Positions 25,966 to 30,371 of a stretch of 64,000 nt of DNA are shown piece after piece. Every line of letters starts with the position of its first letter. Positions within the stretch are counted from its first letter, which is position 1. A program made the translations under genes and the position numbers. Source of the DNA: Adineta vaga (lineage: Eukaryota > Animalia > Rotifera); contig CP075496.1 of assembly GCA_021613535.1 (NCBI GenBank), forward strand, positions 12,958,001-13,022,000, in the 5' to 3' direction. The notes under the pieces were generated by a model, which ran no database searches, was not told where the DNA came from, and worked only from the letters and a program-made list of their open reading frames with translations.

Positions 25966-26709
25966 ACATGCATTTCATTTGCTCAATTTATTCCATTAAT
26001 CAAGCAATAAAATTCTATTTCGTACTTTCATTTTAACTCAGCAATTTTTTATTGATTTTAAAATAAAACTTATATTCTAAATACTTATCATAAACTATTG
26101 ACGTCTAAATGTATTACAGAAATATTATTTCTTCAGTAGTTATCACTTGTCGTTTAAGTATGACTTACTGAGAGAAGTATTTCAAGCGATTTTTTGCTAG
26201 AAGACATACTCAAGAAGCTACTAATTACTGTTTGAGATCGTAGATATAACGTCGAATATAGAATAGTTGTTTGGAGAAAGATATTTCTAGATTGTTATTT
26301 TTTTTGTACCAAAGATTGATCGATTGAGAAGATATCTTCGTTAGGTGAAGAAAAAGAGATGTGTATGTATTCTTGTTTGGTAGAATATGAAAGAGTTCTG
26401 TTTATTGATCATTTAATTAAGCAAGTTCCGTAATTGATACGAAAACATCGATATTAAACGATTCAATTGAGTTTCTTCGAGAATGCGATTAGGATAACTT
26501 GTTAATGAGATGAATGATTGTTGATCATTAGAGAACAACAAAATAATTTTGTTTTTCGATGAGTTTATCGAGAAATAAAAGCACGTCCTACGCACATCGA
26601 TCTCTTTTTTTCTTCTCATCTCATTTTGTTGAGTTATTTTTATAAGTGGAAAGTAATCGTTCAGACAACATTTATTCTCTCATTTATTTCGAATAAACTC
26701 AACTTCATC

Positions 26710-27218
26710 ATGCTATCTAATACTATTGTCCGATTAGCTATGGCCATGTGTCTAGCTTTCCTACTTTTCACAACTGTTCTTTCTGCATCCAGTGTAAGTT
26801 TTTTATTTGAATCATTACCTTTCATATTCATTTCAATTTGTTTAGACATCGGACATAAAAACTGAGTAAGATGATATGTCATTTCAGTGAGATCTTTTGA
26901 GTAGTTGCTGTTTTTTCTCTCTCTCTTGTAGAACCAATGTTCAAGAAACGCAATCGACAATGAACGAATCAGATGAAGATTTAAGTAAACTTTGCCAATA
27001 TTTCTGTTCGAATAATCATTTCTTTACTAAAAGGTAATGAATACCCACTCTTTTTTTGAAACTAGAAAAGATTTTTTTGTTATTCTAGAGCTTATTTAAA
27101 AGGTTTTGTTCATGGTCGATCTGTTGATGAAGAAGCTGATAGTAGTGATGATCTTTTGGATAAACGTTTTGTTCATGGTAAACGTTTCGTTCATGGCAAA
27201 CGTTTTGTTCATGGTTAA
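26710..27218 (+). CDS. Prepro-neuropeptide (FVH-amide repeats), 4 exons, 111 aa
   Basis: Exons 26710-26793, 26846-26865, 26932-27033, 27089-27218 join in frame: signal peptide, acidic spacer, then KR-AYLKGFVHG-R...DKR-FVHG-KR-FVHG-KR-FVHG-stop. Confidence 0.88.
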
Positions 27219-27573
27219 ACATCACTAAATCATCTAAAACATTTTCATTTTACTCATGCGTCTATTGTTATTATCAATCAGCTCGAAAACTAATAAAAAC
27301 AAAATGAATGATCTCGAAATTTGATGTTTACTAGTGACATCTGATGGAATTTGTTAAACGAGCGAGAGAAAGAATGAGAGAGTTGCACGTTTCCTCTGAC
27401 AACAATCAGAATAATGAAGTCGGAAGAGAAAAGGAGCGACCAAAATGAAAATATGAAGGCCTTCAATTTGATGATTTAACAGAGCATCGACGCGAAAAAA
27501 AAAAGAAGAAAAGTAACGAATTGTATTTCTTTTGTCATTGCAAAGAGAATCAAAAGATACTTCCTTGTAAATC

Positions 27574-30371
27574 ATGATCACAGTTGCAACAAGTAAAATA
27601 AATAATCAAACGATTCTCCAAGAACAATTCGATGAAAATTATGAACCAACTCCTGAAGAAATTCGTGAATATGCTATTTATATTGGAATTGATCCAGATA
27701 ACGTAAATTTCGACATTAAAAGAGAGGAAAAAGATGTACGTTATTATGAATTCTAATGTTTTATTTAGGAACCTCATTTACTTTCGTTAGCGAAAGAAGG
27801 TATTTTAAAACCATTACCACCTGGTTGGAAACCATGTCAAGAAGGAAATGGAGAATTGTATTATTTTAATTTTGATACGGGAACATCATCATGGGATCAT
27901 CCATGTGACGAAATCTATAAACAACGTGTTATTGATGAACGGTAAATTTATTCCTAAAAATTCTTTCATTCATTGTTTATGTTTTCTTTTTACTAGACAC
28001 AAACGATCATCATCAAATTTACTTGATACTAATCCTCGAGGTAAGATTTGCTACTAGAGAAGTTTCATTTTTTCGTCAATAATGGAACGATTTTAGGTAC
28101 ATTGACACAAACAGGTGGAACTACATCGACTGTTACTGATTATTTAATTGGTGGAAAAAAGCCGTCTACTCTGAGAGATAATAATAGTACATCTGTAGTA
28201 ACAAGAAATGTTATTGAAACAAATAAAATCGGTAAGAATAAGTCAATATTTTCTTTTGAAAATATTTCTTTTTCCTAGATTCTCATTATGAAAATAGTGA
28301 TAATGAAATCGAAGAACTGATGCATAGCGATGATGATGATGAAGAACAAAGTAGTGATGATTTTCGAAGAAAAGTGGATTTTGGTTAGTAAAACAATACA
28401 TATATTTAATGAAAAATGAAAATATTTATTCTAGGAATCGATCCAACACTTTCTGCACGTATTGAAAAAGATGAAAAAGCAGTAAAAGAAGCAATTGCAA
28501 CGTCACGTCCGTTCAATTCTTTAGAAAGTACAGGTATATCTTCCAATGAATTATTCTACTATATATACTCAATCATATGTTGTAGATCGAAAATTTGATA
28601 CTCGGAAAAGTTCGGATGACGATGATGATTATGAAAATCAACGTAAACTACGAGCTGTAAACGCTGAACGACGTTCATCAGGTGTATCTGTACATAAACC
28701 CGAAATTAATGTATGTAAAGATATGATCTTCAATTATTTGATTTGTACAAAGATTTTGTTTTGTAGGATGATAGTTTCACAACTCCACGAGAGGAAGATA
28801 TGACAAGATTTCGAATACGACTTGAGCAGTAAGAAAGATACATTTGATAATTATATTTATGTGGACTTTTGTTTTGTTTTAATAGAGCTAAGGATGAAGA
28901 AAAACTACAAATCTTTGAAGAACATGAAGCTCTTATTGCAAAATATAGAAATGAACTACGTTTAGAAAAGGATAAACAAGAAAAAGTATTACGTGAAAAA
29001 ATGAAAACTGATTTAGCGTAAGATAATTCTCAATGAATTATTTCCTCATTATGGTTTGCCTTCGAATTTAGTTCAATCGAAAATGAAATACATGAAACGA
29101 TGGGTCAGGAAAAACGATTTCTAGAGAGTCGAAAACAAGACGAAATAAATCATATTAAAGAAACAATTGAAAAAGAAAAAGATGAAATTAAAAAGAAATT
29201 ACGGTAATTTAAAATCAATAAACTTTCCAGATTATCAATTGTACAATTTAGAGCGAGTATGCAGTCAGATTTAGATGTGTTTAAAGGTACACTTGAACAA
29301 CAAAATAATGTGAATGCTCAACTTCGATCGTTACAAGATAAACTTACGCGTGAAAAGAATAGTTTTGAAGAGGTTTGATTTTGATTTGATGTAAATTTAT
29401 AATGTTGTCTTTTTCTATTTTCAAGAAAATACGTCATTTAGAAAGTCAACATAAGAATGAAATTGCTGATTTAACACGACGTTATGAACAAGCTAAGAAC
29501 GATCGAGAAAAATTTGAAAAACATTTGAAAGAAGTAAGATAGCATTCGAAGAACGAAATAATACTACAAATATATTTCATAGAAAGACAATCTTCATTCT
29601 ACATTAAAAAGAACAATTGAACAAATAACTGCTGATAAAGCTTCTATTGAACGTAAATTACAAGATGCCGAATCACAATTGAAAGCAATTGATAATAGTC
29701 ATCGTCAAATTCAATTTTCAAATGCTCGTCAATCATTAATAACTACTAGTGATAATGAAAGTGATGATGATGATGATGATGGTAATAATAGTAAAAATTT
29801 AAAATTAGATCAATCATCCACGAAACATCACAATGGTTTTCATCATGATGAAGATGATATCGATCGTTTAAGTGATACGGATAGTGATGTTATTGAAATG
29901 GAACAAACATTAAAAGAATTACGACAAACTCAACTGGAATATATGTCCTTACTTCCAATAACAAATCTTGATGGCAAACAACATTCACATATGAAACCGA
30001 ATACAACTGCAACGGTTGATTTTAGTAAATTATCTGTTGCTGATGTCGGTCCAGTTATACGAAATATTCGAACAATGCAAAGAACAATTCCAAGATTATA
30101 TGAATCTTTAGAAGCAACATCCAATCATCAATTATTAAATGATTCAGGTCGATGGTCAAATAGTTTAATATCAACAACTGGAAATAATACAAACTCATTA
30201 TCGATGTATCAAACTTTAAATTCCTATCAATCAACTTTATCCAAAACAAATCATTGGACTTCTCAACCAAATCTTGTTACACGAGAAGCAGTTTTAAAAG
30301 CAGCACGTCGAGTCTTTTCACCTGCCATTATCGATCAATTAACAACAAATACAAGATCATCAACTCATTAA
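27574..30371 (+). CDS. CEP164: Centrosomal protein 164-like (WW domain + coiled coil), multi-exon
   Basis: [70 protein letters not shown] matches the CEP164 N-terminus; later coiled-coil exons. Confidence 0.9.

What the first reader, a model, noticed from the sequence alone, without database searches (positions are those of the whole stretch)
26710..27218. Hidden neuropeptide precursor encoding FVH-amide tripeptides
Seen: four small exons (one only 20 nt, missed by the ORF track) splice to MLSNTIVRLAMAMCLAFLLFTTVLSASS-TSDIKTETNVQETQSTMNESDEDLSKLCQYFCSNNHFFT-KR-AYLKGFVHG-R-SVDEEADSSDDLLD-KR-FVHG-KR-FVHG-KR-FVHG*. The repeats differ at synonymous sites (ttt/ttc, ggt/ggc), which argues for selection on the peptide. 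Established: KR cleavage by prohormone convertases plus a C-terminal Gly amide donor (PAM) predicts 3x FVH-NH2 and 1x AYLKGFVH-NH2. Amidated tripeptides are rare (TRH, molluscan NdWFamide). Inference: I do not recognise an FVHamide family, so this may be an undescribed signalling peptide. The CQYFC segment could be a further disulfide-looped product.
Basis: partly seen in the sequence, partly recalled or inferred. Interest (0 to 1): 0.85.

Follow-up and report, generated by a model that had tools for sequence, protein, structure and literature searches.

The report
Bdelloid rotifer FVH-amide peptide precursor
This is a real, transcribed and correctly spliced four-exon gene, conserved across bdelloid rotifers, that looks like a precursor for several copies of a tiny amidated peptide (Phe-Val-His-NH2). 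I found no paper or curated family that describes it, but it is an ordinary kind of gene: a neuropeptide-type precursor.

Summary

- **Second copy in this genome.** A copy on contig C1 keeps the same exon plan and has four KR-FVHG units. The scan had already noted it as s1-498674.
- **Relatives.** They occur in Rotaria, Didymodactylos and 25 AT-rich metagenome contigs.
- **Conservation.** In 20 distinct last exons FVHGRS, RFVHG and KRFVHG never change. Codons vary silently and the acidic spacers vary freely.
- **Processing enzymes.** The genome encodes convertase P-domains and a PHM-type amidating enzyme.
- **Prior description.** No Pfam family matches, and no paper mentions FVHamide.

Best reading: a secreted prepropeptide giving 3x FVH-NH2, 1x AYLKGFVH-NH2 and probably a conserved Cys-loop peptide, acting as a neuropeptide or hormone.

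Shown: the gene, its splicing, its conservation and the enzymes. Not shown: the mature peptides, the cells that express them, or a receptor.

It is a new member of a known kind and is found only in bdelloids at the sensitivity reached. Interest is moderate.

The parts
26641..26646 (+). TATA-like box (TATAAG), about 20 nt upstream of the capped 5' end seen in X6
   Evidence: motif; a cap-switch adaptor abuts 26663 in X6. The contigs of X1 and X3 start further upstream, at 26605 and 26631.
26663..26709 (+). 5' UTR (shortest supported form). There is no upstream ATG between 26605 and 26709.
   Evidence: contig ends; sequence read directly.
26710..26793 (+). Exon 1 coding part: 28-aa signal peptide MLSNTIVRLAMAMCLAFLLFTTVLSASS
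   Evidence: The hydrophobic core has a 12-aa Kyte-Doolittle mean of 2.71. The same exon of 84 nt occurs in the C1 copy and in L004.
26794..26845 (+). Intron 1 (52 nt, GT..AG)
   Evidence: joint 26793>26846 in X1, X3, X6 and X9.
26846..26865 (+). Exon 2: 20-nt microexon (TSDIKT + GA)
   Evidence: A 20-nt microexon at the same place occurs in the C1 copy, L004, L005 and 9 metagenome contigs.
26866..26931 (+). Intron 2 (66 nt, GT..AG)
   Evidence: joint 26865>26932 in all four runs.
26932..27033 (+). Exon 3 (102 nt): acidic pro-region ending in KLCQYFCSNNHFFT-K(R)
   Evidence: The exon has the same length of 102 nt in the C1 copy and in L004.
26993..27007 (+). CQYFC: the CxxxC pair, invariant in 19 distinct relatives
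   Evidence: the exon-3 alignment shows both C residues and the following N as invariant.
27034..27088 (+). Intron 3 (55 nt, GT..AG)
   Evidence: joint listed as 27031>27087 'cut +2', which equals 27033>27089, in X1, X3 and X6.
27089..27218 (+). Exon 4 coding part, including the stop TAA at 27216-27218
27090..27119 (+). AYLKGFVHG-R: predicted AYLKGFVH-NH2. FVHGRS is invariant in all 20 distinct relatives.
27120..27161 (+). Acidic spacer SVDEEADSSDDLLD, variable in sequence and length among relatives
27162..27179 (+). KR-FVHG unit 1 (AAA CGT TTT GTT CAT GGT)
27180..27197 (+). KR-FVHG unit 2 (AAA CGT TTC GTT CAT GGC)
27198..27215 (+). KR-FVHG unit 3 (AAA CGT TTT GTT CAT GGT), directly followed by the stop
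27219..27319 (+). 3' UTR with AATAAA at 27292-27297 and the poly(A) addition site at about 27319
   Evidence: signal. A-runs follow 27319 in X3 and X6.

Best explanation
This is a small secreted prepropeptide gene of bdelloid rotifers.

**Shown**
- The gene is transcribed, spliced from four exons and polyadenylated.
- A second, diverged copy on contig C1 of the same genome is also transcribed.
- Relatives with the same architecture exist throughout bdelloids.
- Selection keeps the FVHG units and their basic flanks, but not the spacers.

**Inferred pathway**
1. The 28-aa signal peptide takes the product into the secretory pathway.
2. PC1/3- or PC2-type convertases cut after KR, and after the single R of the invariant HG-R-S.
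3. A carboxypeptidase trims the basic residues.
4. The genome's PHM-type amidating enzyme converts each C-terminal Gly to an amide.

**Predicted products**
- Three FVH-NH2 (M+H 401.2296).
- One AYLKGFVH-NH2 (M+H 933.5305).
- An acidic spacer.
- An N-terminal pro-peptide carrying a conserved CxxxC loop.

In most relatives, but not in this copy, that loop peptide is also freed by a furin-type RVAR|S site. I judge the peptides most likely to act as neuropeptides or peptide hormones on an unidentified receptor.
For: **Gene and transcript**
- Spliced contigs with all three GT..AG joints occur in three studies. They carry poly(A) and a cap-switch adaptor. Introns and flanks have no depth.
- The exons translate in phase.
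- The genome holds no processed, intron-less copy.

**C1 copy**
- It has the same 84/20/102-nt exons and four KR-FVHG units.
- Exons are 55-75% identical to the window copy, against 44-60% for introns and flanks.
- It is transcribed: the loose ends match its sequence.

**Relatives**
- Rotaria sordida P0011, full length.
- R. socialis P0005, Didymodactylos carnosus P0010 and the JGI protein P0008.
- Loci L004 and L005.
- All 25 hits of a two-unit pattern in 241 million metagenome records are the last exon of this gene, each ending FVHG-TAA.

**Constraint**
- In 20 distinct last exons FVHGRS, RFVHG and KRFVHG are invariant, while spacers vary with indels.
- The first unit was not part of the search pattern. 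It shows 6 codon variants for one unchanged peptide.
- Silent variation occurs at F, V, H, G, K and R codons.

**Synteny**
- A WW-domain gene lies directly downstream in the window, the C1 copy and L005. It is fused to this gene in the Rotaria models.

**Enzymes**
- 11 P_proprotein domain hits.
- A PHM-type exon whose PDB hits are all PAM/PHM, apart from one marginal collagen hit at E 1.8e-4; best E 3e-20.
- A preprint reports PCSK1, PCSK2 and furin paralogues in Adineta vaga (10.1101/802215).

**Weak lead**
- The nearest named ESM Atlas clusters are nearly all neuropeptide precursors, but scores are below 0.9.
Against: - No mature peptide has been observed, so cleavage and amidation are inferred from motifs.
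- No signal-peptide predictor was available. The call rests on a hydropathy profile and the -3/-1 rule.
- The cell type of expression is unknown. Contig depth cannot rank expression.
- The HG-R-S site has its upstream Lys at P7 in most relatives, which is not a classical P4/P6/P8 monobasic context.
- A three-residue ligand is unusually small for a receptor agonist.
- No relative was found outside bdelloids, so no receptor can be inferred by orthology.
- Some Rotaria sp. Silwood1 copies carry FVDG or FVHS, and one keeps no frame across the last junction. Not every copy is maintained.
Confidence: 0.7

Rival explanations
1. The precursor is processed in the same way, but the products are not intercellular signals. 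Free FVH-NH2 has a free amino terminus and His at position 3. That is the minimal ATCUN Cu(II)/Ni(II)-binding motif (established coordination chemistry, from my own knowledge). The peptides could then be secreted metal-binding, antioxidant or antimicrobial agents made by gland or epithelial cells.
For: The unit is released as X-X-His if KR is cut. There are 3-5 units per precursor. Some relatives convert the first unit from LKG-FVHG to LKR-FVHG, which adds another free tripeptide. Both gene copies give well-covered contigs in small runs, though depth cannot rank expression.
Against: The most conserved product in most relatives, A(Y/A/N)LKGFVH-NH2, has its His at position 8 and is not an ATCUN peptide. 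The architecture is that of regulated-secretion neuropeptides: acidic spacers, GKR sites, low copy number. No metal-binding or cell-type data exist.
Confidence: 0.12
2. The gene is a strongly diverged member of a known bilaterian neuropeptide family. One candidate is the gnathiferan counterpart of TRH/EFLGamide, which also has short multi-copy amides. Another is a CCHamide/excitatory-peptide relative (two Cys, C-terminal His-amide). On this reading it is not a new family.
For: Like TRH, it gives several copies of a three-residue amide flanked by KR. The one survey of rotifer proteomes does not list TRH among the families it found in rotifers (10.1101/2024.07.20.604414). The pro-region has two Cys, and the first peptide ends in His-amide.
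Against: No Pfam neuropeptide family matches any full-length relative at E<=1; only unrelated sub-threshold hits appear. A profile search of 1.84 billion proteins found only bdelloids, one cnidarian repeat protein and one spurious hit. The peptide has no pGlu/Glu start and no resemblance to EFLG or QHP. The two Cys are separated from the His-amide by a conserved KR and have CxxxC spacing, unlike CCHamide. CCHamide was reported separately in rotifers.
Confidence: 0.1
3. The functional product is the conserved Cys-loop pro-region, or the uncleaved protein. The FVHG-KR tail is then a processing, sorting or structural appendage and not a source of active peptides.
For: The block SA.SESDDDL.K[FY]CQYFC.NN..F.KR is well conserved. 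In most relatives it is flanked by RVAR|S and KR.
Against: This copy and its Adineta-type relatives (L004, L021) have lost the RVAR site yet keep the FVHG units perfectly. Unit number changes between 3 and 5 while each unit stays exact. That is how multi-copy peptide precursors behave, not how structural tails behave.
Confidence: 0.06
4. There is no real gene: the model is a chance ORF chain or a transcribed pseudogene.
For: None remains. Before testing, the 20-nt exon looked suspicious.
Against: Exact spliced contigs occur in three studies. The exon plan is conserved in more than 20 relatives. The pattern count is 3, against 0.00 expected.
Confidence: 0.01

Closest known systems
Thyrotropin-releasing hormone (TRH) precursor and its invertebrate EFLGamide-type counterparts
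   Same: A signal peptide followed by several copies of a very short peptide. Each copy is flanked by dibasic sites and ends in a Gly amide donor. The mature product is a three-residue amide containing His.
   Different: TRH is pGlu-His-Pro-NH2 and needs an N-terminal Gln; FVH has none. There is no sequence or Pfam match. The receptor relationship is untested. The FVH gene also carries an N-terminally extended octapeptide and a Cys-loop pro-region.
FMRFamide-related peptide precursors (Pfam FARP, PF01581)
   Same: Multi-copy short amidated peptides with GKR/GR junctions and acidic spacers. Copy number changes between species while the peptide stays fixed.
   Different: The C-terminus is Val-His-amide, not Arg-Phe-amide. 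There is no FARP match. An Atlas feature score of 0.87 to a FARP cluster is only a lead.
Molluscan NdWFamide and achatin-type (GFxD) short peptides
   Same: Three- to four-residue secreted peptides cut from multi-copy precursors. The first unit reads K-GFVH-G, and GFVD-G in one Rotaria copy, which loosely recalls GFxD.
   Different: Achatins are not amidated and carry a D-residue at position 2. The repeated units here are KR-FVHG without the Gly. No homology was detected.
CCHamide / trochozoan excitatory peptide
   Same: Two cysteines and a C-terminal amidated His occur in one precursor.
   Different: In CCHamide both Cys and the His-amide lie in one peptide that directly follows the signal peptide. 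Here a conserved KR separates them, the loop is CxxxC, and an acidic region precedes it.
Nematostella vectensis XP_048581297 (annotated 'cylicin-2'), P0004
   Same: A signal peptide and about 25 units of KR-FVYG-(G)KR, giving predicted FVYG-NH2 and FVY-NH2. It was the only non-rotifer profile hit that looks like a precursor (E 2.3e-16).
   Different: It has Tyr where the rotifer gene has His. It has no Cys-loop block and no AxLKGFVHGRS unit, and it is much longer (400 aa). The match rests on a six-residue repeat, so convergence is as likely as homology. No paper mentions it under FVYG.
ATCUN (amino-terminal Cu/Ni) peptides such as GGH and the N-terminus of serum albumin
   Same: Free FVH-NH2 has a free amine, two peptide nitrogens and His at position 3, which defines the motif (my own knowledge).
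   Different: Metal binding is not known to be its function, and the octapeptide product lacks the motif.

Membership tests
Multi-copy amidated neuropeptide/peptide-hormone precursor (generic kind) | N-terminal signal peptide | tested here: met
   n-region with Arg, a 16-residue hydrophobic core (12-aa KD mean 2.71) and a small-residue c-region SASS. It is conserved in the C1 copy, L004, L005, P0011 and the metagenome loci. No SignalP run was possible.
Multi-copy amidated neuropeptide/peptide-hormone precursor (generic kind) | Repeated peptide units bounded by dibasic cleavage sites, each with a C-terminal Gly amide donor | tested here: met
   3x KR-FVHG plus KR-AYLKGFVHG-R.
Multi-copy amidated neuropeptide/peptide-hormone precursor (generic kind) | Peptide units conserved while spacers diverge between species | tested here: met
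   Across 20 distinct last exons, FVHGRS, RFVHG and KRFVHG are invariant and the spacers vary with indels. Silent codon variation is present.
Multi-copy amidated neuropeptide/peptide-hormone precursor (generic kind) | Processing enzymes present in the same genome (kexin-like convertase, amidating monooxygenase) | tested here: met
   11 P_proprotein hits. There is a PHM-type exon at C6:11965568-11965939 (L014) whose PDB hits are all PAM/PHM apart from one marginal collagen hit at E 1.8e-4. Four sampled Cu2_monooxygen loci are not evidence for it: two are DBH-like by PDB search, and two carry DBH-like or DOMON-like motifs in my reading of their ORF translations.
Multi-copy amidated neuropeptide/peptide-hormone precursor (generic kind) | Mature amidated peptides detectable; expression in neurons or endocrine cells; a cognate receptor | not testable with these tools
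   Only assembled contigs of whole-animal runs were available.
TRH / EFLGamide family | Recognisable TRH-type precursor or peptide motif (QHP-G, or E-F-L-G type) | tested here: not met
   No Pfam neuropeptide family matches at E<=1 for P0008, P0010, P0011 or the window exons. The unit is FVH, without Gln or Glu.
TRH / EFLGamide family | Activates a TRH-type receptor | not testable with these tools
   This needs a receptor assay.
FMRFamide-related peptides (PF01581) | C-terminal R-F-amide units; match to the FARP profile | tested here: not met
   The units end in V-H-Gly, and there is no FARP hit.
CCHamide / excitatory peptide | A single peptide directly after the signal peptide, with two Cys forming a loop and a C-terminal His-amide | tested here: not met
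   The Cys pair (CxxxC) lies behind an acidic region and is cut off from the His-amide peptide by a conserved KR.
ATCUN metal-binding peptides | Free N-terminus with His at position 3 | tested here: inconclusive
   The sequence fits for FVH if KR is cleaved. It does not fit AYLKGFVH. Metal binding was not tested.

The most novel reading that the evidence does not exclude
FVH-NH2 is a genetically encoded minimal ATCUN tripeptide. Bdelloid rotifers would then secrete, from a conserved and duplicated multi-copy gene, a high-affinity Cu(II)/Ni(II)-binding peptide. It could serve as a metal-handling or antioxidant agent, or as a copper-dependent signal, in animals known for desiccation and radiation tolerance. 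On this reading it would not be a conventional receptor ligand.
Probability: 0.1. Interest if true: 0.7.

Novelty: new member of a known kind. Interest (0 to 1): 0.45.

Why it matters
Rotifers and other gnathiferans are a known gap in the map of animal neuropeptides. A 2021 survey calls them "the next frontier" (PMC8557429). The one proteome-wide rotifer study used only arthropod family models (10.1101/2024.07.20.604414).

This gene offers a clean, lineage-wide peptide family that homology-based surveys cannot see:
- The gene model is fully verified.
- Two transcribed copies can be compared within one genome.
- The predicted products have exact masses and are cheap to synthesise.

That makes peptidomics, antibody staining and receptor deorphanisation in bdelloids directly feasible. 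An amidated tripeptide ending in His is chemically unusual, and its copper-binding potential can be tested in a day. The 20-nt microexon, conserved across the class, also explains why automatic annotation gets this gene wrong: truncated or fused models occur in Rotaria and in an Adineta-like scaffold.

Tried and rejected
**Joined model**
- The joined spliced protein of the window was never sent to a search tool. Searches used single exons by reference, or database proteins.

**Protein searches**
- A search with the mechanical 79-aa ORF over exon 1 returned only P0001, an unspliced mis-model from an Adineta-like scaffold. It was useful only as a route to L004.
- Full-length relatives of about 110 aa were invisible to the exon-4 query because of the length window. 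They were reached through the profile search and through P0008.

**Amidating enzyme**
- The first candidates were wrong. Two of the best Cu2_monooxygen hits, L008 and L009, are DBH-like by PDB search.
- L012 and L013 were never searched against PDB or Pfam. I read DBH-like or DOMON-like motifs in their ORF translations.
- The PHM-type gene appeared only with the C-terminal domain profile.

**Set aside**
- P0009, a 614-aa LLSNFMHGRS repeat protein, as a spurious profile hit.
- The Nematostella FVYG protein as a possible convergent case.

**Blanks**
- Pfam: only unrelated hits below the cut-offs.
- Atlas feature scores are all below 0.9, so they are a lead only.
- Literature searches for FVHamide, FVH-NH2 and FVHG found only clavanin sequences and noise.

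**Rotaria sp. Silwood1 locus L006**
- I tried to keep the frame across the last junction and found no canonical solution. I did not resolve whether this is decay, an assembly error in an A-run, or another splice.

**Not run**
- No structure or complex prediction, because a disordered 111-aa precursor would give nothing usable.

Full report
**1. What is in the sequence**

- Exon 1 (26710-26793) gives a 28-residue hydrophobic leader.
- Exon 2 (26846-26865) is 20 nt and gives TSDIKT plus two bases.
- Exon 3 (26932-27033) gives an acidic stretch ending ...KLCQYFCSNNHFFTK.
- Exon 4 (27089-27218) gives AYLKGFVHG-R, a 14-residue acidic spacer, three KR-FVHG units and TAA.

The split codons GA|A and AG|A keep the frame, and all introns are GT..AG. 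A degenerate KR-FVHG pattern matches three times in the 64-kb window, against 0.00 expected from shuffles. The units differ only at silent positions, TTT/TTC and GGT/GGC.

**2. Is it a gene?**

Yes. I laid the contigs of four public runs on 26450-27500.
- Three runs from three different studies of the same coded organism (X1, X3, X6) each hold one contig of 530-534 nt. It covers the exons with no mismatch and skips exactly 26794-26845, 26866-26931 and 27034-27088.
- A fourth run, labelled as another organism (X9), shows the first two joints with identical sequence. I do not count it as cross-species evidence.
- X3 and X6 run into A-tracts after 27319. AATAAA lies at 27292.
- X6 carries a cap-switch adaptor abutting 26663, about 20 nt downstream of a TATAAG box.
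- Introns and the flank 27350-27500 have zero depth in every run, so this material is cDNA.
- The genome holds no intron-less copy.
- There is no ATG between 26605 and the start codon.

Contig depth cannot rank expression, so I make no claim about level.

**3. A second copy in the same genome**

The assembly has 100.8 Mb in six contigs, and the window lies on C4. The same search found a diverged copy on C1 (L002). Read on its coding strand, it has:
- an 84-nt signal-peptide exon;
- a 20-nt microexon (SSDATS + GA);
- a 102-nt exon ending ...KYCQELCPNQSPFAK;
- a last exon with AALKGFVHG-R, a spacer and four KR-FVHG units.

Exons are 55-75% identical between the copies. Introns and flanks are 44-60% identical. 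The loose ends of further contigs match the C1 last exon and 3' UTR, so that copy is transcribed too.

The genome size, the six chromosome-scale contigs, the C1/C4 pairing and the bdelloid relatives fit Adineta vaga and its old genome duplication. That name is my inference; the tools code the organism.

**4. Relatives elsewhere**

I searched exon by exon by reference, then with database proteins.
- The exon-4 search and a four-sequence profile (A1) run against 1.84 billion representatives found Rotaria sp. Silwood1, R. socialis, Didymodactylos carnosus, an unnamed JGI protein and an ENA contig.
- P0008 as query added a correctly modelled full-length R. sordida protein of 108 aa.
- All of these are annotated as 'unnamed' or 'uncharacterized'.
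- L005, from a GC-richer bdelloid-like contig, has the full four-exon plan, again with a 20-nt microexon. Its first unit reads KR-FVHG-R.
- L004 has the first three exons, of 84, 20 and 102 nt.
- A two-unit DNA pattern scanned over 241 million metagenome records gave 25 contigs. Every one is the last exon of this gene and ends FVHG-TAA, on AT-rich DNA of 25-35% GC.
- Where these contigs reach upstream, the signal peptide, the microexon (TCATCNGACTCNAAAACAGA) and the Cys-loop exon are present.
- A WW-domain gene follows directly downstream in the window (27769-27942), in the C1 copy and in L005. In Rotaria it is fused to this gene in two automatic models. The loci are therefore orthologous, not merely similar.

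**5. What selection keeps**

Among 20 distinct last exons, FVHGRS, RFVHG and KRFVHG are invariant. The acidic spacers change in sequence and length, and the number of FVHG units runs from 3 to 5. The first unit was not part of the metagenome pattern, so its invariance is unbiased. It is written with six different codon strings.

The residues before it vary: AYLKG, AALKG, ANLKG, APLRG, ANLKR, INPKR. Some lineages therefore release an octapeptide, and others release one more tripeptide.

In exon 3 both Cys and the following Asn are invariant. Most relatives read SN(V/I)RVAR|SA.SESDDDL.K(F/Y)CQYFC.NN..F.KR. This means a furin-type RxxR site and a KR site bracket a 25-residue Cys-loop peptide. The window's copy and its Adineta-type relatives (L004, L021) have lost that RVAR site (VQETQS, HEVQS) but keep everything else.

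**6. How it most likely works**

Shown: the transcript, the reading frame, the conservation pattern, and the presence of the needed enzymes.
- The genome has 11 convertase P-domain hits.
- It has an exon whose solved relatives are all peptidylglycine alpha-hydroxylating monooxygenase, apart from one marginal collagen hit at E 1.8e-4; best E 3e-20.
- Two of the strongest copper-monooxygenase hits, L008 and L009, are dopamine-beta-hydroxylase-like by PDB search. For L012 and L013 I read DBH-like or DOMON-like motifs in the ORF translations only, without a database search. None of the four counts as evidence here.
- A preprint reports PCSK1, PCSK2 and furin paralogues in Adineta vaga (10.1101/802215).

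Inferred, from the established prohormone pathway:
1. The signal peptide is removed.
2. Convertases cut after KR and after the R of HG-R-S.
3. A carboxypeptidase trims the basic residues.
4. Gly is converted to an amide.

The predicted products are 3x FVH-NH2, 1x AYLKGFVH-NH2, a spacer and the Cys-loop pro-peptide. That these act as neuropeptides or hormones is the most likely reading (about 0.7) but is untested. The nearest named clusters in the ESM Atlas are nearly all neuropeptide precursors of unrelated families, at scores below 0.9. That is a lead, not evidence.

**7. Rivals**

- (a) The peptides are not signals. Free FVH-NH2 is a minimal ATCUN Cu/Ni site (my own knowledge), so a metal-handling or antioxidant role is conceivable. 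Against it, the conserved octapeptide is not ATCUN, and the architecture is that of regulated-secretion peptides.
- (b) It is a diverged member of a known family such as TRH/EFLGamide or CCHamide. Nothing tested supports this, though only a receptor assay can exclude it.
- (c) The Cys-loop region is the real product. The perfect upkeep of the units argues against it, because this copy has lost the upstream cleavage site.
- (d) No gene. This is refuted.

**8. Comparison with what is known**

It works like TRH and FMRFamide-type precursors, but it fails the membership tests I could run for TRH, FARP and CCHamide (motif comparison).
- No paper in the searched library contains FVHamide or FVH-NH2.
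- Searches for rotifer, Adineta or bdelloid neuropeptides returned one proteome survey based on 46 arthropod family models and a mollusc-centred study that found few families in Rotaria.
- A 2021 paper names gnathiferans as the unsampled frontier.
- The library lacks most subscription journals, so 'undescribed' means undescribed there and in Pfam.

**9. Verdict**

This is a new, bdelloid-wide peptide family of a familiar kind. It is moderately interesting: it is not surprising in principle, but it is unusually well supported and immediately testable, and it has a chemically odd product.

Noticed in passing
P0004 (Nematostella vectensis XP_048581297, annotated 'cylicin-2'): A 400-aa protein with a signal peptide and about 25 units of KR-FVYG-(G)KR, which predicts FVYG-NH2 and FVY-NH2. 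It looks like an unrecognised cnidarian neuropeptide precursor under a wrong name. No paper holds both FVYG and Nematostella.
   Followed up: partly
window 27574-27942 (+), and L002 896-1069 (-), L005 3289-3480: A WW-domain gene lies directly downstream of the peptide gene in both genome copies and in other bdelloids. From memory its N-terminal region recalls CEP164, but I did not test that. Rotaria sp. Silwood1 models P0006 and P0007 fuse it to the last exon of the peptide gene.
   Followed up: partly
G000 genome-wide; L008, L009, L012, L013: There are 23 Cu2_monooxygen matches. L008 and L009 are dopamine-beta-hydroxylase-like by PDB search. L012 and L013 show DBH-like or DOMON-like motifs in their ORF translations by eye. 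This points to a sizeable expansion of that family compared with a single PHM-type locus.
   Followed up: partly
G000:C6:11965568-11965939 (L014:1571-1939, minus strand): An exon of a PHM-type peptidylglycine amidating enzyme. All its PDB hits are PAM/PHM apart from one marginal collagen hit. A weaker Cu2_monoox_C match at C3:4542628-4542995 may be its duplicate.
   Followed up: partly
L006 174-461 (Rotaria sp. Silwood1, CAJNZF010003603.1): This copy reads GFVDG in the first unit and ends FVHS instead of FVHG. The canonical exon 3/4 junction does not keep the frame. It may be a decaying copy or an assembly error in an A-run.
   Followed up: partly
P0001 / L004 591-1004: The public gene model for the Adineta-like relative reads through intron 1, starts in the 5' UTR, and misses the real product entirely. 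The 20-nt microexon defeats automatic annotation.
   Followed up: yes
same genome, other windows (scan notes s1-484689, s1-505393, s1-505444, s1-494557, s1-505530, s1-502340, s1-483079): The first-stage reader listed at least seven further putative amidated-peptide precursors in this genome. Together they would make a first bdelloid neuropeptide catalogue. None was checked here.
   Followed up: no
window 26450-26563: A low-depth contig (3.2) of run X3 lies just upstream of the gene and stops at 26563. It may belong to a neighbouring transcript.
   Followed up: no
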